This document shows positions 1,711-13,131 of a stretch of 64,000 nucleotides of DNA, piece after piece; the stretch's first letter is position 1; each line of letters starts with the position of its first letter. Below the pieces are notes generated by a model. That model saw only the letters and a list, made by a program, of their open reading frames with translations, was not told the origin of the DNA and ran no database searches. The position numbers and the translations under genes were made by a program. This DNA is from Styela clava (lineage: Eukaryota): the NCBI RefSeq assembly GCF_964204865.1, contig NC_135259.1:11160001-11224000 (forward strand). The letters run 5' to 3'.

Positions 1711-2159
1711 AAAGAACATAAGGAATAGTGTTCGTTCACTGCAGTTCTTCGCGATACAAGCATATGGTATAGTTTACTATGACGGCAGCTTGCTTGATTT
1801 CCAAAAAACATCGTTAATATAAGCACTAAATGCCTACACGAACCATGGCCATATGACATTCAATCATTAACAATTGTTTTTAGTCGTTTACAACATTCAG
1901 AATAATGCCTAACATTTTGTAGTTATTTTACCATAAAAAGGCAATAATATAGTGGCGGCTCTGTACTTCAGTCAAGAATATCGAATTCCGACACTTTGTT
2001 CACATTGTAATCACTGGAAGAGGGCGGAAACATCTTGTGATCTGCACAGGTTACATGAATAGCTTCGTCCATATGTGTTGGCAATTTTACATGCTCACCT
2101 CATTAGTTCTTGCAATACTACATCGATGACATATAATTACTGCTCTGCAACAAGCATAA

Positions 2160-5100
2160 ATGTTCAAATATTGTATTTTTCTTTTGTTATTATGTATAAT
2201 CGAACGCGTGATCAACACGAAGGCTGCATGTAGGCAAGGTAAGAATCTTGAATATCAGTTAAGACAAGAAAATGACAAAATAATCATTAATATCCTATTT
2301 CGCGCCAAAAAAGTGTCATAGTATGGATGATATGGATGTCCACACATAAACTAGGCTTGTCAGTATGAGTAATATTGGAAGGCATGATTTTAAAACGTAA
2401 GACAATATAGTTGTAGAATACAGACTTTAAACTTCTAATGATTCTTTCCGTTGAAGTCAACATCTATAAGTAATTTGAAGTCTCATGTCGTGAATATATG
2501 TGAAAATTTCAAGTATATACATCTTATTTGCAATGCCCATTGGCGATAAGAAGAGTGTTGTCAAAAGTTTTTTCTTGTACTTCTTTGTTTGTATGTGATT
2601 GATTCTCCATATACTTCACCTAAATTGTATTCTTCGAATTATACTATACAATGCTCCCACGAATTGCTAACACGTCATACAAGAAATTATGAACTATTTT
2701 TAAATGAAGAATTTTCTCAATGGAGTTCATGGTCCTCGTGTAGTTCAACGTGTGGTTATGGACACGAATCTCGAAAGAGGACAAAGTGCAATCCTTATAC
2801 TGCTTCCACTGGTGCGGAAAATGAACAACGATTCTGCATGCTACGCTTTTGTCCTAGTAAGTATATGGAATTATGTATATTATTCATTCTAAGAAAGAAA
2901 TCATATATTGACAAATATTTTCTGCATCAGTATGTTTTCCGCTTTGTTTTAAGATGATGTCAAATAACATTTCGCAAAAAAAAAAACATAGAAAATAAGG
3001 CAATGTGTGCAAATTCATAGGTTTAGAGTAGAAGTTTGATAAGAATTTCTTTTGTTTTAGGTACACACACGTTATTCGAGATGTAGAAAAATTCTTTAGT
3101 TCATTACACCAAATTTAAAAAGCTATTTTTCATACTTGTTTAAATTCCTATTTATTATTGAATTAGTTTATCAATTTCTAATATATATATATTTGATTCA
3201 CAAAATTCAGGCTATTTGACTTGGCCGCGATTGCATTTTTACGGGAAGTTGATTGCAGACGTCAGTACAAGGAACAATATACGATGCAATTACGATACCA
3301 AACATTTTGTAACTGCATTTGGATCAAGATCCGTGAGTCCCTCCATTATTTTAATAGTTATTCGAAAGTGGGCTAGTCCAAAGTGGACCTATGAAGCGTT
3401 TGTTAATATGTTGTTGTTGTTCGTATGCTTCTTTTCTTGATGTTGTTGTTGTTAAAAGAACGTTTTCTCTTTAATTACGGACCATTTGCTTTGCTTTTCA
3501 GTGGTTAAAGATTGTTGTTGTCTCCAGGGGGTCAATATTTTTATTTATTTCGAAAATTTCTGCGGGCTCTACGAGATTTGTTGTTTTCATGTGATGACGT
3601 CATTAAAATGAAAATGTACGCACCTTGTGGCGGTTCCGCGTTTGCTGAGATTTGGTGGTCAGTCGATGTCGGAAAGACTGCGGTACTGTACCGGAACTGT
3701 AAAGATTGGATACCCGTACTACCTTATTTGACATACGTGTCCATATGTTTGAGCATAACTCTCTTGTATTAATGAGTAGCAGCTCAGCATCCTAATCCAT
3801 TACAGTCTAAGGAAGTAAAAACCTTTTCAAGCAAAAAGTTACTGGCTCATATGCAAAAAACCTTGTAAATAGAAGTATATTCAAAGACATCACATTCATG
3901 AGAAGCTCGCAACCCGTTGAAATTGCAGAACTGAAAAAAATATTCCTTTCAGTGTAATATCGGGAGGGAAGATTATTCAAATCAATCGTTTATCAATCAC
4001 AATATTATTGCTTGTCTATATAGTTAGGTTTATTTGTCGCTATAACATTTTTCAGATTTATATCTATCTGCGAAAGCACAATTTCATTTTAGCATCAAAA
4101 GCTATTGAACAAATATTCGATTTCTGCAGTTTTACTGCTTTACAGTTTATGCTATATTCCAGGACCATAACTGGAACCCAGACGGAAGTGGAAATTTTTA
4201 CTTCGCAGATACGACGGTCACTTCATTATGCACAGCACCAGGGACTTGCTCCACATCAGCTCATATAGTTTCATCGTCTCTGCGAGGTAAGGAATGCATA
4301 TCGTTTAATTACTACCATTGTGCAAAGTAAGTAATGCTTGACTGTGCAATGGTACGAACATATATAAATCGTAGAAAACAGATGGAGAACCTATTGTCCT
4401 TGGTTTGCGTAATTCTTCTGATTTTGTGTGTGAGTATGTATATATATAGCATTTACGCTGAATTTTATGTTAATGTAATAGTTGAAACGTGATCATAATA
4501 ACTCATATTTAATCTGCGTTTTGATGAGAAAAAATAAGCGAAAGCAAAAATGCGATCGTTTAAAATGAACGCTATTTTATCAAAAATTGATTGAGTATTG
4601 TAGCCTGTTAACCCATTATGCGTTGTTCGTGTCATATTAGTTATCTTCTTTCAGAAAAATCAAGAGCATCTCTTGTCGATGTCGATACAGATTGGCAGCG
4701 TATATGTGAAATATGGGGTTTACATATTGTGATATCAGGCATTCTTGAAGCAAAATATACCAGAATATCGATGGGGAAAATGAGAAGTAGAACGAAAAAA
4801 GTTGATGGAGACGCAGCTAGTAGCGTTAATTTCAAAACGTTAGTTTTGTTCATTGCATGTTTTGAACTTTTTGATTCAATTTTGTAATAATTAATCACGT
4901 AATTACTTACAGATACAGATATAATTTACTTTACAAAAATATTCATCGTTTTTGTCACACCTAACCTCACCATGATAATTATGATTACCTTTATACAGTA
5001 AACTGACCAACATCAAATGGCTGAATAACTACTACAAAAACATGTTTTACAATGCTTCCGAATTGTCGATGTCATTTGTTTTTGATCTGTATCAATTCAA

Positions 5101-8100
5101 AGATAAATCAGGACGGATTTCAGGAACGATTGGTATAACTGTTTTGCATTCTATACAGAAGAAACCATTGGTCAGCAAATTAAGCTTTCATTATTAATGC
5201 TGTATGAATATATAGCAGTAGGTCAAGAGGAGCAGGACTTCCATCCAAGTTTTCAATTTGCATTGGCCTGATTCTATACCATCTCTTCTGAGTACCTATA
5301 CACTTTCGTTTCCGCTCAGTGGTAATTGCTAATGTCCAATTTTTGTACCATTATATCTATATTTTTAACTCATCTAAAGTGACTCGGGTACTTGAGATTG
5401 GGCTATAGTGGAAATAGGTAAGGTATGCCTCTGCGTGTAAATGGGCCAGCTATTAACCATAATTTATATTACTAAACCTATGCACGTTATCTCTTAAAGT
5501 GTTTACATTCTTCAATGCAAAATTAAGGAATGACATCTTTAGACGACCCACTTCAAACAGTAGCTACAAGAGTTATGAGGGCAGATGGTTGGAAAAAAGT
5601 TGGGTTTGCACCGTTTGTCGTACATTACGATAAGAAATACTTGGTCTTAGATATATCGAATTCTATAGAATGTGAGGAAAATGGAAAATTTGGACCTGTT
5701 AAAAACCTCGACTTAGCTGTAAGGGTAAAACTGAAAGAATATTGCAAGTAAGTTTATAATATTTGATTAAATTCTATGATAATAAACCGGTCAAATCAAT
5801 TGATGCAACCGAAAAATACTTACTCTTCGCTGTAACGTGTTTTAGATTAAACTTTTCTCCGTATGAATGGACCAATCCATTTCAAATTTAAAGATGGAAG
5901 AGGTTGAAGAAAGACTTTAACTTTTCTCCATATTTTTTGTTATTATTTTGAGTGATTTTAGACTCGACATTTCACTTCAAATTTTTCTGTTCTGGCTCAT
6001 ATTACAGCGCCATGGACGAATCTAGTTCTCAGATAAGGCCTTGTCGATACCGATGTGATTAAATACAAAATAAATCGAACAAAAATTACAAAATAAAACA
6101 GAATAATTTTTAACATTTTTTGCAACAGATATTACTGGCATATAAAGAGATGTTGGTCGCCATATAACTCTGACAGTGAAATAATCATATATTTAACAAA
6201 GAATGGGGAAATTTCAAAACGAATAAACTCAGGTCAGGATTGGTATGAAACATTTGCTGGAATAATGGACATTAGTTTGATGAATGTGGATGCGAAGATG
6301 ATGGAAATTCTAAAATATAATCAATTAATGTTAGTTGAGAGGAGCAATACGAAGAAGAGGTACTTACATATTTGTTATTTTGCATCGGGCAATTAAGTTG
6401 TGTATGTGACGTGTAATCAGTCGTCTTTTCAAATTTTATTTGGGTGATAAAATATAAAATCATTCGATAAACTAACATTTAATACTATGTACTTTATGTA
6501 CTTTATAAATATATACACAAATATATTTTAATCATAATAATCATAATATGTTCTTATGATCGAATTATTAATTTTGTCTCATAACACACGGATCTTTCCG
6601 GATTGTTTTGCGGGAATCTGAGTTTGGTTTGCATGTCGGACCAGTAGAAAGAGCTGTCTTCAGACTCAATGTCGGCCAAAGTGAAACTTTGAAACTATTT
6701 GTCAGTAAGTTTGGTGCTCCATCCCCGTCAATAAATGTAGAAATGAATACTTTTACATACTTCAATGAAGACGGCGATAACTGCCCATTCTATTGCAACA
6801 GGTTCGTATCCTCAATATGTCCAAAATAAAGTATCATTCAGAATCTGCTTCATCTCTCTTTATCCTCAGGTTTGCATGAAATAATTATACTTACTCATCA
6901 AAGTTTAAGAATATTTTTTATTAATACCATGATCGTATTTGAACAATTTTAAGCTGAAACGAAAAAAAAAAACACAATATAAAACTGCAGACTTATTTGG
7001 AGTGTTTGTTGTTCGATTGAATATATTAAAATGTAATTATCATAGAAAATGTTCACTATATTATGAATATAATGTTAACTTCGTATTCAGAACTATTGGG
7101 TGGCCTAAGGAAGTTTTATCAATACAATCATTGCATGAAGCACCGTTGACAAACAGCGCGGGAATAGTCAACTTCGTTTTGGAAGCTGTTCAAAATCCGC
7201 GCTTTCCTCGACGTTGTGGACTCGATGGCCAGGTGTACCCGATTCAAATTCTTATCAGGTGAGAAATATGAATAGTACAATCGATCTTTTTGATCAAAAA
7301 CCTTAGTTCATTGGCAAAAAAATAGTGTTTAAATGTATGATGCAATGCAATCAATTATTATTTATTCAACAAAACATCAAGAACAACTTCTCAGCCGACC
7401 GATTCATATCTGTCCATTCTATCTATGTTCGATCATCAATTACGGACTCTGTAGTATGTAATCGTGACCTCAAACATTAGTTAGATAGATCTTCGCCGTT
7501 AGTGGCGATCAAAAGTTGTCCCAACTTTTAAATTTAATGTGTTAGTAATGGCTTCGACCTTATGGCAATATTGTCATTTCTGTAGCAACCTTTTTTTTAT
7601 GCCACCCAGTAAATGTGATAATTATTTGCACATTATAAAATATGATCTAAACAGACAATAAGTAAAGTAAGTTATCATTTAACAAACACGTTGTTAATAT
7701 TTATTTTGTTTCTGTTTAACAGAAGATTTGTTATCATCAACTAGATCAAACAATTTTTTAAATGTTTAGAACTAAAATGATTCCACTTTTACTTTATCTA
7801 AGATCCCCGAGTACTGTTGTTGTGCCCCAAATTTTACTTATTTTGAAAATTGTGGCACCACGGGGATTGCATTCTAATAAATTAAGGCAATTTGGTGGTA
7901 AATCCAAGATGTGGAAGGTAATGCACTTGTTTGTGTTAAAATCGTTAACAAAACAGAATATATTACTCTTACTTCCAGGTACAAGTCTAAGTCTAAGTCA
8001 TATGTGTTTGAAGAAGGCGCCAGACCAGGGAATTTATTTCCAAACATTGACTTTACGAGTTTTCCTATAGCTACTCTTGTGTTCGGTGAAGTTGAAAACA

Positions 8101-11100
8101 TAGACTGCCCAATATGGGAAGATGTCAAAGGTACATTTTAAAATATAGCTAGATAATATATGTTGTATTTTCTTGTTCGGAAAAGAAAGAGAGGATTTGG
8201 TTTATTCATTATAGAATATATTTTATAAATATTTTTAATTTCAGATATTTTCCAGCTTTACTATAACTTATATCCAGTAATGTGGAAAAACAACATAATC
8301 GACATGAATTCGTTCGAAGACGTTAAAAGTAAAGCCCATATGCTCAAAATGTCGATGTTTGAATTTGATATGGAAAATTCACGGTATTGGTATAAATGGC
8401 ATTGTTTTAAAGTAATAAGTATGATTATAGTACAACAGTCGTTTTCTCATATTAAAAGAGAAATATGGCATATTGATTTTAGTAGTACTGGCAAATTAAG
8501 CAGGTCCAAAAATATTATTTTTGAAGCGAGATTTCTGTGACAGTCTACAAATATCACTGATAAATTTCAGATACATGCCAAGACAACGGGATTTGTCATA
8601 TAGCAAAAGACGTCTTGTATGGAATTGGATGAAATGTGGAATGAGGAAAGGATCACTCAGTATAAGAGAAGGTAAATAGTACATTTAATATAAATCATAG
8701 GAAAGAAAAAAAATTTTTTTTCCGGTAAAAACCCAATGGAATTAAAAAGCAAGCCATAATTTTTTAATAATGTTTACTCATTGTTGAATGTTCCAATAAT
8801 TTTATTTTTTGCCGTCACCTTTAAGTGAAAATGAAGATGGATGTAACATACATTTTCATCTTATGTAGAACGTTACACAAATTTCGATGATATATATTTC
8901 ATTTTACATGAAGCAAAATAGCAATACAAAAAGGGCATTCATTATTGTACAAGTATGATGTATGTCGGAAATATCGAATTGTCAACTTTTTATTTCTAAC
9001 AATAAAACGTGGTACAAATTAGGTTAAGATGAATTTGAGATTTACCTCAAAATTCGAATTGTGCACCAGTCATCCTTAATTAATGTTAAGGGACCTTATA
9101 AAAACGTGAGTATGAGATCTTTCTTGTTAACACGTCTAAACATTTTTTTTGGTGACTATTGGACAATGATATCATTCAATTTACAACAGGATTTACCGGT
9201 ATGTATATAGATTTTGTTTGTTTATAAACTTTCAAACATGACATTGTTTGAAACTCTAAATACATATAGACAAATTTTTACCCAACAGAACGGACAATGA
9301 ATCTGTGTACTGGGGCGTCACTGCGAAAGAAAGTGGAAGAACTGAAACAAGACATTCAAAACGCAATTTTTGCAGAAATCTCGGTTATACCCCCGTATCT
9401 AACGGCATGGTTAAGTATAAAATGGAGTCGAGGTAGAAACAGAGAAGTTGCAGACATTCTGAAGGAAATACTACATGACGAAATGAGACATATGACGCTT
9501 GCTACTAATATTTTGAATTCGGTAAAATTAATATGAATCATATACTATGCTGCTAAGTAGTAGAAAGTGCCGGAACGTTTTTATTGTGTCGGAGGATTCT
9601 AGTAATTATTAATGTTAGTGTGATGCAGGGAGTCGCATTTGAGAACAACTTTTTTTTATTACCGTACGGTAATAGAACAATTACTATGATTGTATTTTAT
9701 TTGTAGTCGAATTTAATATATGTGGTATTAAATCGTAACATTTTTAGATCGGCGGAAAACCTGATTTCACAACAACCCCCCCTGCTTATCCTTCTACAAT
9801 AGGTATGGGAAGTTTCTATGGCCTTGATAAGGGGCATGTTCTTTCTCTCGGTCCTGTATCAATTGGTAGAATCAATGATGTGTTTTCCAGAATTGAGCAA
9901 CCGGCCAACGACAATGGAAAAGAGGTAATGAATAAATACTTCTTCAATTAAACCGCGGAAAGAGACACTATTCCTTCGAGAAAGTCAAAGTAAAATCACT
10001 TAATCACTCTGTTTGTGTTAATAGAAGTGGGCGCGCACGCTATTTGGAAATATGGTGCATGCATCCGATCCTGTACGGACATGTTAAATCAGGTCCACGA
10101 CTTTCAAGCCATATAGTGACAATTAAATTTTTTCGCGCACTTATGTTCTACACCTATTAGAACTCAAAATCGTAACAAATGTAAGTAGGTAACTGAGCAA
10201 TTCGCGTAAAGCTTACCGAGAATATTATTCAAATCACTTTTTTCAATCCTTAGCTGATGTCGTTCTTCGTCATTTTATGGAAAGTAGTATTGGCAGTTGA
10301 AAAGTACGAAGTGATGGAGTCAACAACAGAAAAAACTTTATTACAGGCCGTCAGAAAGTTGCACCAACATACGAACAAACCAAAATCAAATAAAACGTAC
10401 ATCTTTGAAAATCAGATGTGGCAAAGAATGAAAACCAAACAACAGAAGATAACTCATATTTGGCGGTTGATTAAAAAGTTTACTGGCGACAAACTGTTGG
10501 ATATTGCGAAACAAGAAATGCACACTATTGGTGGCTTTTACGCTAAATTAGCTCTCAAACTTGCTAACGTGGAGGCTTGCGTTAAACTTCAAAAACAAGA
10601 AAGTGGCGGAAACTCGTATTCTAAAAATAGGATTCGTGATCGAACAATATTCATAGGGAATTCTGCTAGGCAGCTAAAATCAAAACATTGGTACAAACGC
10701 CCATCCACAAATACGGAAATAGATTGCACGGCTGAAAAAATATCACGCACTATGGGTAATTTTCCACCTCCTGACAGCGCTCATGGTAGAGAAGCACTCT
10801 GGAGATTTGCGAGAAAAGAAAACAGGTCAATGAGCGAGAATAGCAATGAAAACTGTGGTTCCGTAAATGATCTGGAGAAAGCACCTACTACAATTTTTGA
10901 AGTTACCAGTCTTTCATCTGCCCTTCGTTCTCTAATAGAGATAGTTTACGAAGGGGGAGGGGGTTCCGCTTGCTCACCTTATGAAGAATTATATGGAAAC
11001 GACTCAACAGTTTTATCTCATTTTTATCGTTTTCAAGAAATAGTACATGGTCGCAAACTTATAAAAGTTCCTCGGGATAAAGTTTTGCCAACTTACCAAT

Positions 11101-11480
11101 GTGTTAACATGTCAAGATGGTGTGCTAATTTTCACAGCCAATGGAGGTATTGTTACGCTGGAGATCGTATAACATTTTATGAAGATGGCGTTTGGTCAAT
11201 TTCTTCGGAAAGTAAATTCAATCCATATGTTTCTGGTACCTACGTACAGAGACTTGACTGGCAGTTTTCGTTGATTTATTCGAGATTATTACGATGCTTG
11301 GAGAAAGTCTTTAATGGCAATCCTGACCAAATTAAAATTTGCATGGTGGAAATGTACGAGTTAACGATGGTTGGTAGAGAACTAGTTGCAACAAATATTC
11401 AACATACGAATAACACCGACGGGCAGTCTGTAGCAACACACAAACGGGGTTGTCCTACATTTTACTATATTTCCGACTAG
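2160..11480 (+). CDS. Secreted TSP1-domain + VioB/RebD/StaD-like (iminophenylpyruvate dimer synthase-like) protein with C-terminal ferritin-like domain; 16 coding exons, ~1215 aa
   Basis: Phase-consistent exons: 2160-2238, 2710-2856, 3211-3332, 4163-4286, 4655-4838, 4999-5132, 5528-5747, 6129-6359, 6592-6801, 7091-7258, 7979-8130, 8245-8383, 8571-8671, 9289-9521, 9748-9924, 10254-11480 (3648 nt). Signal peptide MFKYCIFLLLLCII and TSP1 WSSWSSCSSTCGYGHESRKRTKC. Motifs I recognise from VioB-like proteins occur in order: WPRLHFYG..ADVSTRNN, WNPDGSGNF, LVDVDTDWQ..EIWGL, GRISGTIG, LDGQVY, PIWEDV..IF..Y..LYPVM, YMPRQRDLS. Ferritin-like motifs: AIFAEISVIPPYLTA, DEMRHMTLATNILNSIGGKP, IVYEGGG, SHFYRFQEI. 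The exon 9 acceptor is non-canonical (GG). Confidence 0.8.
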
Positions 11481-13131
11481 TTCTAATTAAGTAATACATT
11501 AGATACTGTGAATTAGCTACATTAGTAAAAAAGCATTTCAACCAACTTTTTGATTGTATGTCATTCATAAAGCAAAGAGAGTAATAAAATCTAGTACATA
11601 CTGTATCTGTTCCTTAAGAGAAGATCATTATGACGATTTCTATTGTTTGCATATCTAGCGATAGCGATGCGATGTCTAGCAATTCAAATTGCACGTTCTT
11701 TATTTAATATCTATGAAGGTAAATTACAATAATTAAATTGTTTTGTTGTTCGTATTTTATAGGCAAAAATTTAACTTGCAAAATATAGTGGGCAAATCGC
11801 GACAAATGACACTGTAAAATATTTTGAATATTATATATATATATAGATGTATTAAAATGATATCATAAATGAAACATACTCTGACGACCAACCATTTTGA
11901 ACAACTGGTGATTTGATTTAAATTGTCAATGCCAATAAATGTGTCTAGAATACTAAGTAATTTCGATTCTTGAGCAATTCAAAATGGTGCTTTTCCGTAT
12001 AATGGATGACAGACAGTATTGGTATTTGAGGAAGCAATCGAAGTTTTGATCACCGCCCAGTCAACTAAAAGTTTACGGTACAATGCCTCAAGGTAAATAA
12101 CCAGATAAAGTTTTGCCAACTTACCAATGTGTTAACATGTCAAGATGGTGTGCTAATTTTCACAGCCAATGGAGGTATTGTTACGCTGGAGATCGTATAA
12201 CATTTTATGAAGATGGCGTTTGGTCAATTTCTTCGGAAAGTTAATTCAATCCATATGTTTCTGGTACCTACGTACAGAGACTTGACTGGCAGTTTTCGTT
12301 GATTTATTCGAGATTATTACGATGCTTGGAGAAAGTCTTTAATGGCAATCCTGACCAAATTAAAATTTGCATGGTGGAAATGTACGAGTTAACGATGGTT
12401 GGTAGAGAACTAGTTGCAACAAATATTCAACATACGAATAACACCGACGGGCAGTCTGTAGCAACACACAAACGGGGTTGTCCTACATTTTACTATATTT
12501 CCGACTAGTTCTAATTAAGTAATACATTAGATACTGTGAATTAGCTACATTAGTAAAAAAGCATTTCAACCAACTTTTTGATTGTATGTCATTCATAAAG
12601 CAAAGAGAGTAATAAAATCTAGTACATACTGTATCTGTTCCTTAAGAGAAGATCATTATGACGATTTCTATTGTTTGCATATCTAGCGATAGCGATGCGA
12701 TGTCTAGCAATTCAAATTGCACGTTCTTTATTTAATATCTATGAAGGTAAATTACAATAATTAAATTGTTTTGTTGTTCGTATTTTATAGGCAAAAATTT
12801 AACTTGCAAAATATAGTGGGCAAATCGCGACAAATGACACTGTAAAATATTTTGAATATTATATATATATATAGATGTATTAAAATGATATCATAAATGA
12901 AACATACTCTGACGACCAACCATTTTGAACAACTGGTGATTTGATTTAAATTGTCAATGCCAATAAATGTGTCTAGAATACTAAGTAATTTCGATTCTTG
13001 AGCAATTCAAAATGGTGCTTTTCCGTATAATGGATGACAGACAGTATTGGTATTTGAGGAAGCAATCGAAGTTTTGATCACCGCCCAGTCAACTAAAAGT
13101 TTACGGTACAATGCCTCAAGGTAAATAACCA
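11076..13131 (+). repeat. Head-to-tail tandem duplication, 1028-bp unit (11076-12103 and 12104-13131), covering the 3' coding end and 3' flank of the VioB-like gene
   Basis: The copies look identical by eye except AAA>TAA at 12242 in copy 2. ORF 12299-12508 repeats the C-terminus of ORF 10257-11480. Confidence 0.95.
12104..12508 (+). pseudogene. Duplicated, stop-containing fragment of the VioB-like gene's last exon
   Basis: Copy of 11076-11480 with an in-frame TAA at 12242-12244 and no 5' part. Confidence 0.8.

What the first reader, a model, noticed from the sequence alone, without database searches (positions are those of the whole stretch)
2160..11480. Bacterial-type VioB/RebD-like enzyme domesticated as an intron-rich secreted animal protein with a TSP1 module
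Seen: a 16-exon gene in which a signal-peptide exon and a symmetric phase 1-1 TSP1 exon precede a full-length VioB-like body. Known: VioB, RebD and StaD are heme enzymes that couple indolepyruvate imines in violacein, rebeccamycin and staurosporine biosynthesis, and ascidians are sources of indolocarbazole and bis-aryl pyrrole alkaloids usually credited to symbionts. From memory, uncharacterised VioB-like genes occur patchily in other marine invertebrates. Inference: an old horizontal acquisition plus exon shuffling, giving an extracellular oxidative-coupling or defence enzyme. No partner amino-acid oxidase (VioA/RebO-like) is visible in this window.
Basis: partly seen in the sequence, partly recalled or inferred. 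Interest (0 to 1): 0.8.

Follow-up and report, generated by a model that had tools for sequence, protein, structure and literature searches.

The report
Secreted VioB-superfamily gene in sea squirt
This is a real, transcribed 16-exon sea-squirt gene for a secreted protein that joins a thrombospondin module to a full-length distant relative of the bacterial pigment enzyme VioB. It belongs to an unstudied family that runs from sponges to sea squirts, so it is not a recent bacterial import.

Summary
Window 2160-11480 (+) carries a 16-exon gene of 3645 coding nt (1215 codons). Exon 1 is a signal-peptide exon. Exon 2 is a 147-nt phase 1-1 TSP1 exon. Exons 3-16 are collinear with bacterial two-domain proteins starting from their second residue. 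Spliced contigs from public runs confirm introns 1-11, and they correct the exon 8/9 borders to 6359/6592.

The body is not a VioB orthologue: relatives score 15-46 bits against a TIGR04492 cut-off of 1250. A profile of its family nevertheless aligns with true VioB plus RebD/StaD-like proteins over the whole length (hhalign E 8e-51, 848 columns), and 47 near-invariant residues are shared.

The family occurs in sponge, corals, a brachiopod, acorn worms, amphioxus and sea squirts. Nearly all full-length members have signal-like N-termini, and different phyla carry different extracellular modules. The animal sequences cluster, with sponge basal, and animal monophyly is not rejected (AU p = 0.31). 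Any transfer was therefore ancient, and nothing found here ties the gene to ascidian alkaloids.

This copy has lost one universally conserved Glu ([E/Q]GEG reads EGGG) and one TSP1 cysteine, so it may be impaired. No partner oxidase lies nearby. The scan had already flagged two paralogues in this genome.

The parts
2160..2238 (+). Exon 1: start codon and signal-peptide-like segment (MFKYCIFLLLLCII...), ends in phase 1
   Evidence: The ATG follows an in-frame stop. The hydrophobic core CIFLLLLCII is read directly from the sequence. The joint 2238/2710 is seen in an RNA-type contig.
2710..2856 (+). Exon 2: TSP1 module, 147 nt, symmetric phase 1-1. It has WSxWS and CSxTCG motifs but only 5 of the usual 6 cysteines (Gly at 2811-2813 where six relatives have Cys).
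   Evidence: Pfam TSP_1 1.1e-7; phases; joints 2238/2710 and 2856/3211; alignment with six tunicate relatives.
3211..8671 (+). Exons 3-13 (3211-3332, 4163-4286, 4655-4838, 4999-5132, 5528-5747, 6129-6359, 6592-6801, 7091-7258, 7979-8130, 8245-8383, 8571-8671): N-terminal domain of the VioB-superfamily body. It is a beta-sandwich array plus a helical tail and starts with the YLxWPRLHF motif.
   Evidence: Exon-by-exon tblastn to Styela paralogues; homology to ~600-aa bacterial N-domain proteins; the AF2 model of the bacterial homologue P0173 has pLDDT 89; joints; invariant residues kept.
6360..6591 (+). Intron 8, spliced in RNA contigs of two runs but reading GT..GG (non-canonical acceptor) in this reference
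   Evidence: Joint 6358/6591, movable by 1 nt, in X1 and X2; sequence.
9289..9924 (+). Exons 14-15 (9289-9521, 9748-9924): first half of the ferritin-like domain (PF12902), with E...EMRH and IEQP motifs
   Evidence: Pfam PF12902 7.4e-14; conserved E575, E608/M609/H611 and E669 equivalents present.
10254..11480 (+). Exon 16: rest of the ferritin-like domain with tunicate-specific inserts, the C-terminal domain, and the stop codon at 11478-11480
   Evidence: Pfam PF12902 1.4e-8; 257 relatives at E<=1e-3 in 1.84 billion representatives; sister to Styela LOC120338016 in the trees.
10950..10961 (+). GAA GGG GGA GGG = E-G-G-G, where every other family member and VioB have [E/Q]-G-E-G. The invariant Glu (VioB E813) is Gly at codon 10956-10958.
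   Evidence: the other paralogues in the same genome keep GEG.
11076..13131 (+). Tandem duplication with period 1028 bp (11076-12103 and 12104-13131, ~99% identical). The second copy repeats the last ~134 codons and the 3' flank.

Best explanation
The locus is a genuine, transcribed and spliced Styela clava gene for a secreted ~1215-residue protein.

The architecture is shown. It runs: signal peptide, one TSP1 module, then a complete VioB-superfamily body. The body consists of a ~560-aa beta-sandwich N-domain, a ferritin-like four-helix domain (PF12902) carrying a Glu/His set, and a C-terminal domain.

The family placement is also shown. The gene belongs to an uncharacterised metazoan family (sponge, corals, brachiopod, hemichordates, amphioxus, tunicates). 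Nearly all full-length members have signal-like N-termini. Different phyla have added different extracellular modules in front of the body: TSP1 in tunicates, Kazal/FN2/F5-8C/kringle in amphioxus, EGF in a soft coral. The family is a full-length paralogue of VioB/RebD/StaD. Its nearest relatives are widespread bacterial two-domain proteins that lack signal peptides.

The following is inferred. A bacterial-type gene entered, or was already present in, the animal stem lineage. It gained a signal peptide and was then inherited vertically with many losses. The tunicate ancestor added the TSP1 exon by exon shuffling. The protein works outside the cell as an iron-dependent (di-iron and/or heme) oxidase on small amino-acid-derived or aromatic substrates, with TSP1 tethering it to matrix or tunic. 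This particular copy has lost one of the six conserved Glu/His residues and one TSP1 disulfide cysteine. It is therefore probably weakened or changed in function compared with its intact paralogues.
For: Gene model and splicing. Domains. N-domain homology to bacterial proteins, starting at their residue 2 right after TSP1. Full-length homology of the family profile to 4 true VioB plus 7 RebD/StaD-like proteins: hhalign probability 100, E 8.2e-51, 848 columns, with 47 shared near-invariant columns including E/ExxH/E/E/H and MPxxRD. The ferritin-like motifs are also shared with the solved 3hl1 and a bacterioferritin entry. Animal distribution and names. Trees: animals plus one unnamed clade form a clade with SH-aLRT 98, sponge is basal, and each phylum is monophyletic; AU test of animal monophyly gives p = 0.31. 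Signal-like N-termini occur in nearly all full-length animal members and in none of the bacterial ones. There are at least 572 bacterial loci across many phyla. Loss of Glu. Loss of Cys: and no differing letters at 2811-2812 in RNA contigs. The reaction of RebD/StaD, a heme-containing enzyme coupling two imines, is taken from PMC10851217.
Against: No biochemical datum exists for any member of this branch, and identity to VioB/RebD is only ~21% at profile level. TIGR04492 membership fails. No linked amino-acid oxidase was found. The N-domain has only generic Ig/MG-like structural matches, so the catalytic site is not located. The cofactor (heme or di-iron) is unknown. An unnamed intronless metagenomic clade sits among the animals in one tree and outside them in another, so a single origin is not proven. 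Signal peptides were judged by hydropathy, not by a dedicated predictor. The E-to-G change and the GG acceptor were seen only in this reference assembly.
Confidence: 0.7

Rival explanations
1. Bona fide imine-coupling enzyme. The protein is a functional equivalent of VioB/RebD/StaD that couples aryl-pyruvate imines made by an unlinked L-amino-acid oxidase. On this reading the animal itself makes bis-indole or bis-aryl pyrrole alkaloids.
For: Full-length homology and shared conserved residues with VioB/RebD. The genome holds a tandem array of amino-oxidase genes on another contig. PF12902 domains are fused to, or lie next to, LodA-type amino-acid oxidases elsewhere (P0298; fungal clusters in PMC4417212).
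Against: It is a separate family, far from the VioB equivalog. One bacterium carries both a true VioB and a family member, so the two are not interchangeable. The family occurs in sponges, corals, a brachiopod, acorn worms and amphioxus, not just in sea squirts. No oxidase is linked. This copy lacks an invariant Glu.
Confidence: 0.12
2. Decaying or non-catalytic copy. This paralogue is drifting towards a pseudogene, or has become a binding or structural matrix protein that no longer catalyses anything.
For: The universally conserved [E/Q]GEG reads EGGG only in this copy. The fourth TSP1 cysteine, conserved in six tunicate relatives, is Gly here. Intron 8 has a GG acceptor in the reference. The 3' end carries a recent partial tandem duplication.
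Against: The reading frame is open over 1215 codons and 16 exons. Nearly all of the other near-invariant residues that could be placed are kept. The gene is transcribed and correctly spliced in several runs, including across intron 8.
Confidence: 0.3
3. Recent or repeated horizontal transfers. Tunicates, or each invertebrate phylum separately, took the gene from marine bacteria or symbionts. Alternatively the sequence is symbiont contamination.
For: The closest non-animal relatives are bacterial, at about 30-35% identity. The distribution in animals is patchy. The sponge gene has an 830-aa uninterrupted ORF. An unnamed intronless clade nests among the animals in one tree.
Against: The gene has fifteen spliceosomal introns, 33% GC like its surroundings, a chromosome-scale contig and spliced transcripts. 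Tunicate, amphioxus, hemichordate, cnidarian and sponge sequences each form one clade, arranged roughly as the species tree. Animal monophyly is not rejected. TSP1 is present in both tunicate subclades.
Confidence: 0.08

Closest known systems
VioB / RebD / StaD (iminophenyl-pyruvate dimer synthase, chromopyrrolic acid synthase; NCBIfam TIGR04492)
   Same: The overall build is the same and homologous from end to end: an N-terminal domain opening with the PRLHF motif, the YMPxTRDL motif, a PF12902 ferritin-like domain with E, ExxH, ExP, GEG and H, and a C-terminal domain. The family profile gives hhalign E 8e-51 over 848 columns, with 47 shared near-invariant columns.
   Different: Profile identity is about 21%. 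Relatives score 15-46 bits against a cut-off of 1250, and no exon hits the model. This protein is secreted, has TSP1 and large inserts, and has no oxidase partner or operon. The Glu corresponding to VioB E813 is Gly in this copy.
Bacterial two-domain 'ferritin-like domain-containing proteins' (e.g. Chitinophaga qingshengii P0215, Mucilaginibacter sp. FT3.2, Chloroflexota MAG P0054) and their split N-only plus ferritin-only gene pairs
   Same: These are the nearest non-animal relatives (about 30-50% identity among themselves, about 30-35% to animal members). They have the same two domains and the same invariant residues.
   Different: They have no signal peptide, no extracellular modules and no introns. 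In many species they are split into two ORFs. About a quarter of the loci examined lie beside an eboA-F-type cluster. Their function is unknown.
Styela clava LOC120338016 (XP_039261872.1) and LOC120338304 (XP_039262216), Ciona LOC100180317 / LOC100184225, Clavelina LOC143461065
   Same: These are paralogues and orthologues with the same signal peptide, TSP1 and body architecture. The window gene is sister to LOC120338016 (SH-aLRT 99, 46-54% identity in exon 16).
   Different: They keep the GEG glutamate and all six TSP1 cysteines. All are annotated only as uncharacterised.
PDB 3hl1, 'ferritin like protein' (listed under that title only; no organism or function given in the search)
   Same: It is the only solved structure found by sequence. 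It shares the ELxTIPxYL, EMLH, IExPE, IGxFY and QGEG motifs of the ferritin-like domain.
   Different: It is 317 aa with a single domain, no N-domain, and no published function known to me.

Membership tests
VioB equivalog (NCBIfam TIGR04492) / RebD-StaD chromopyrrolic acid synthases | Whole-protein score above the curated cut-off (1250 bits) | tested here: not met
   The own-genome six-frame scan gave no match at E<=10. Full-length relatives score 15-46 bits. True VioB in Massilia-family genomes scores 1833-1908 bits.
VioB equivalog (NCBIfam TIGR04492) / RebD-StaD chromopyrrolic acid synthases | End-to-end collinear homology (N-domain, ferritin-like domain and C-terminal domain) | tested here: met
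   hhalign of family alignment A1 against VioB/RebD alignment A2 gives probability 100, E 8.2e-51, 848 columns. The window exons align to A1.
VioB equivalog (NCBIfam TIGR04492) / RebD-StaD chromopyrrolic acid synthases | Conserved polar core residues (VioB E619, E679/M680/H682, E735, E813, H826, M564-P565-x-x-R568) | tested here: inconclusive
   All are present in the window exons except the E813 equivalent, which is Gly.
VioB equivalog (NCBIfam TIGR04492) / RebD-StaD chromopyrrolic acid synthases | Works with an adjacent FAD amino-acid oxidase (VioA/RebO/StaO) | tested here: not met
   There are no PF01593 or LodA_N hits in the window. The nearest PF01593 hit on the contig is ~1.3 Mb away, and a tandem array lies on another contig.
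VioB equivalog (NCBIfam TIGR04492) / RebD-StaD chromopyrrolic acid synthases | Heme binding and imine-coupling activity | not testable with these tools
   This needs protein chemistry. The property is known for RebD/StaD from PMC10851217.
Pfam PF12902 Ferritin-like (VioB/RebD domain) | Score above the gathering threshold (22.3 bits) | tested here: met
   Exon 14 scores 52.6 bits and exon 16 scores 35.3 bits. The own-genome scan gives 51.4 bits at this locus.
Pfam PF00090 TSP_1 | Score above the gathering threshold (21.6 bits) | tested here: met
   32.3 bits, E 1.1e-7.
Pfam PF00090 TSP_1 | Six-cysteine disulfide pattern | tested here: not met
   There are five cysteines. The fourth is Gly (2811-2813), whereas six tunicate relatives all have Cys there.
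Metazoan secreted VioB-like family (uncharacterised; named only here) | Signal-like N-terminus, N-domain plus PF12902 body, and placement inside the animal clade | tested here: met
Gene of horizontal (bacterial) origin | Animal clade nested in bacterial diversity and absent from other eukaryotes | tested here: inconclusive
   At least 572 bacterial loci were found, and the animals form one group. The base of the tree is unresolved. No search of non-animal eukaryotic genomes was possible. Only PF12902-only genes are reported in fungi.

The most novel reading that the evidence does not exclude
Animals from sponges to sea squirts carry an ancient, secreted branch of the VioB/RebD superfamily that is catalytically active. 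On this reading marine invertebrates themselves perform extracellular iron-dependent oxidative coupling of amino-acid-derived or aromatic small molecules (pigments, defence compounds or matrix cross-links). The bacterial sister proteins that sit beside ebo clusters would do related chemistry in the ebo pathway, which a 2026 preprint links to thallusin.
Probability: 0.2. Interest if true: 0.85.

Novelty: new variant of a known kind. Interest (0 to 1): 0.6.

Why it matters
Whether animals make natural products themselves, rather than through their symbionts, is an active question. This is a whole family of animal genes related to a key bis-indole-forming enzyme. The family is secreted, has been repeatedly fused to extracellular modules, and has no paper on it in the library searched. 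Its breadth, from sponge to tunicate, makes it a candidate ancient animal extracellular redox enzyme and gives clear targets for expression and assay. For this particular copy, the result warns that it may be a weakened paralogue. The intact copies (LOC120338304, LOC120338016) are better test subjects.

Tried and rejected
- Homology-only model of intron 8 (6333 to 6572 or 6623): rejected by the RNA joints.
- Exon-level hit to the VioB model in the genome: none.
- PDB sequence search: only 3hl1 and a bacterioferritin entry, with no VioB/RebD structure.
- Fold search of the N-domain model: only generic beta-sandwich matches (Foldseek TM <= 0.17; VIA Z <= 9 on one Ig-like subdomain). No enzyme fold could be assigned.
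- LodA-like N-domain idea: no Pfam support.
- Search with the sponge protein for other early eukaryotes: only 3 hits.
- Metagenome scan to identify the unnamed clade (P0090 and others): only distant, intronless, high-GC relatives, so its origin is still open.
- AU test under the mixture model did not finish. It was rerun with LG+G4 on 45 rows.
- Literature searches for animal VioB-like genes found nothing. The HGT compendium has no supplements held.
- Tandem Repeats Finder missed the 1028-bp duplication because its period limit is 500. The duplication was found by direct comparison.
All searches used single exons or database proteins, so I could not check whether this exact protein is already in RefSeq.
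Full report
**What is there**

The window is AT-rich (about 33% GC) and maps to G000:C13:11160001-11224000. I translated single exons and compared them with two Styela clava proteins returned by the large protein search: P0001 = XP_039261872.1 and P0002 = XP_039262216. This gave a collinear series of 16 coding segments on the + strand.

GT/AG sites and phase bookkeeping fixed the borders. The exons are 2160-2238, 2710-2856, 3211-3332, 4163-4286, 4655-4838, 4999-5132, 5528-5747, 6129-6359, 6592-6801, 7091-7258, 7979-8130, 8245-8383, 8571-8671, 9289-9521, 9748-9924 and 10254-11480. Together they make 3645 nt, or 1215 codons. No exon contains a stop, and all phases are consistent.

Every search used one exon or a database protein. 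For the same reason I could not look up whether this exact protein is already annotated.

**Transcription and splicing**

Four runs of the same organism hold 11-19% of the words of the 9.4-kb stretch. Their contigs, laid on 2150-8149, skip exactly these intervals: 2238/2710, 2856/3211, 3332/4163, 4286/4655, 4838/4999, 5132/5528, 5747/6129, 6801/7091 and 7258/7979. A loose end at 8130 reads the first bases of exon 12.

So the signal-peptide exon, the TSP1 exon and the body are spliced into one message. Intron 8 differs from my homology guess. Two runs join 6359 to 6592, which keeps the frame but leaves GT..GG in this reference. Introns 12-15 rest on homology and GT-AG only.

**Domains**

- Exon 1 encodes MFKYCIFLLLLCIIERVINTKAA..., a typical hydrophobic signal core. 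This is read directly from the sequence; no predictor was run.
- Exon 2 is 147 nt, phase 1-1, and matches Pfam TSP_1.
- Exons 14 and 16 match PF12902, the ferritin-like 'VioB/RebD' domain.
- Exon 3 opens with YLTWPRLHF. In the paralogue P0001, the residue just after TSP1 aligns with residue 2 of bacterial proteins that start MSYL..PRLHF. The animal-specific exons were therefore added in front of a complete bacterial-type protein.

**The family**

Exon 16 alone finds 257 relatives at E <= 1e-3 among 1.84 billion representatives. All the long ones carry an N-domain of about 560 aa with no Pfam model, followed by PF12902.

A genome scan found at least 572 bacterial loci in many phyla. In many species the gene is split into an N-domain ORF and a ferritin ORF.

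None of these proteins is VioB. TIGR04492 scores are 15-46 bits against a cut-off of 1250, and the window genome gives no hit at all.

I then fetched four true VioB genes (1833-1908 bits) and seven RebD/StaD-like genes from bacterial genomes. One of those genomes holds both a true VioB and a family member. The profile-profile comparison of the family (A1) with the VioB/RebD set (A2) gives probability 100, E 8.2e-51 and 848 aligned columns, covering both proteins almost end to end. Forty-seven near-invariant columns are shared. They include:

- E575, E608-M609-x-H611, E669, E754 and H770 in P0215 numbering, which correspond to VioB E619, E679/M680/H682, E735, E813 and H826;
- the MPxxRD motif.

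The same ferritin motifs occur in the solved 3hl1 and resemble bacterioferritin. This is a sister family, not an orthologue.

**Structure**

An AlphaFold model of a bacterial N-domain protein (pLDDT 89, pTM 0.89) is a string of beta-sandwiches with a helical tail. PDB comparisons gave only generic Ig- or macroglobulin-like matches. No catalytic fold can be named for the N-domain. The conserved polar cluster lies in the helical tail and the ferritin-like domain.

**Who has it**

Named members come from the following groups:

- Porifera: Oscarella lobularis;
- Cnidaria: Oculina, Stylophora, Dendronephthya;
- Brachiopoda: Lingula;
- Hemichordata: Saccoglossus, Ptychodera, Glandiceps;
- Cephalochordata: Branchiostoma, with many copies;
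- Tunicata: Styela, Ciona, Clavelina.

Nearly all full-length animal models have a hydrophobic N-terminus, and bacterial ones do not. Tunicate members carry TSP1. Amphioxus copies carry Kazal, FN2, F5/8C or kringle modules. A soft-coral copy carries EGF repeats.

In a tree of the C-terminal region, all animals group together (SH-aLRT 92), with the sponge sequences basal. In a full-length tree rooted on VioB/RebD, the animals plus one unnamed, intronless, signal-less metagenomic clade form a clade (SH-aLRT 98). In that tree the sponge, cnidarian, hemichordate and amphioxus sequences each form one clade, the tunicates do so once the window's exon-16 row is counted with them, and the window exon is sister to Styela LOC120338016. 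Animal monophyly is not rejected (AU p = 0.31).

The simplest reading is one very old origin, at or before the base of animals, followed by vertical descent with many losses. TSP1 would then have been added in the tunicate stem, because both tunicate subclades have it. Direction (bacteria to animals) is likely but unproven. I could not search non-animal eukaryotes.

**This copy**

The genome has at least five loci. The others keep the universal [E/Q]GEG motif, except the C19 copy, where the motif was not found in the long ORF examined. The window reads E-G-G-G (GAA GGG GGA GGG at 10950-10961), so the Glu that is invariant in the 28-member family alignment and all 11 VioB/RebD sequences is Gly. 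Its TSP1 has five cysteines; the fourth, present in six tunicate relatives, is Gly, and the RNA contigs show no difference at that codon's first two bases. Intron 8 also has a GG acceptor in the reference.

Against decay, the frame is open, the message is spliced, and nearly all of the other near-invariant residues that could be placed are kept. I rate a weakened or altered function for this copy at about 0.3.

**Function**

RebD/StaD are heme-containing enzymes that couple two tryptophan-derived imines (PMC10851217). By homology I propose an extracellular iron-dependent oxidase. The substrate is unknown.

- No amino-acid oxidase is linked. An array lies on another contig, and no LodA is present.
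- PF12902 domains are fused to LodA (P0298) and lie beside lodA in fungi (PMC4417212). This is a weak hint that this domain handles amino-acid-oxidase products.
- In 13-15 of 51 bacterial loci, the family gene lies beside a TatD/UbiA/DHQS-like/phosphodiesterase cluster of the eboA-F type. A 2026 preprint ties that cluster to thallusin biosynthesis without mentioning this gene.

**Novelty**

No paper in the library mentions VioB-like genes of these animals. Databases list them as uncharacterised, and UniProt labels some automatically as 'iminophenyl-pyruvate dimer synthase domain-containing'. Earlier notes of this scan describe two paralogues of this genome with the same reading. My results agree with them. 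They add the sponge and brachiopod members, the direct VioB/RebD profile test, the RNA joints, the lost Glu and Cys, and the ebo neighbourhood.

**Tools unavailable**

Noticed in passing
window 11076-13131: There is a tandem duplication with period 1028 bp and about 99% identity. The second copy repeats the last ~134 codons of the gene plus 3' flank. It could be a recent duplication or an assembly artefact.
   Followed up: partly
window ~3380-3772 (inside intron 3): Many RNA-type contigs lie here at higher depth, with numerous loose ends and odd joints. The stretch looks like a transcribed dispersed repeat or transposon fragment and is not part of the gene.
   Followed up: no
L011, L012, L030, L032, L035, L040, L041, L045, L053, L063, L064, L067, L068 (bacterial loci): In 13-15 of 51 bacterial loci with full flanks, the VioB-like two-domain gene lies directly beside an eboA-F-type cluster (TatD-like, UbiA prenyltransferase, DHQ-synthase-like cyclase, alkaline-phosphatase-family phosphodiesterase). 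This holds across Bacteroidota, Actinomycetota and Pseudomonadota. The ebo papers read here do not mention the gene.
   Followed up: partly
L029, L030, L039, L044, L054, L056, L058, L064, L066-L068, L083: In many bacteria the family gene is split into a ~560-665-aa N-domain ORF followed by a separate ferritin-like ORF. In others it is one 880-1070-aa ORF.
   Followed up: partly
G002 (Massilia sp. YIM B04103): L067 and L090: One bacterial genome carries both a true VioB (1865 bits) and a member of the sister family, so the two are distinct paralogous lineages.
   Followed up: yes
P0298 (Minicystis MAG); PMC4417212: P0298 is a fusion of PF12902 with the N-terminal domain of a LodA/GoxA quinoprotein amino-acid oxidase. 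Fungal lodA/lodB clusters with PF12902 genes beside them are reported in the literature.
   Followed up: partly
G000:C17:9.73-9.79 Mb: A tandem array of at least six amino-oxidase (PF01593) genes lies in the same genome, unlinked to any VioB-like locus.
   Followed up: no
L008 (G000:C13:2.17 Mb) versus P0001: RefSeq flags LOC120338016 as LOW QUALITY, and its model has a frameshifted stretch that replaces the SHYYRFQEI motif. In this assembly the last exon of that locus is intact, so the defect belongs to the older model.
   Followed up: partly
P0199, P0201, P0204, P0208, P0234: Amphioxus copies carry Kazal, fibronectin-II, F5/8C or kringle modules, and a soft-coral copy carries EGF repeats, all ahead of the same body. 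Extracellular modules have thus been added repeatedly and independently.
   Followed up: partly
P0090, P0099, P0119, P0236, P0269, P0271: This unnamed clade of 990-1125-aa intronless proteins on large metagenome contigs has no signal peptide and a ~100-aa linker insert. It falls inside or beside the animal clade depending on the tree. Its organism is unknown.
   Followed up: partly
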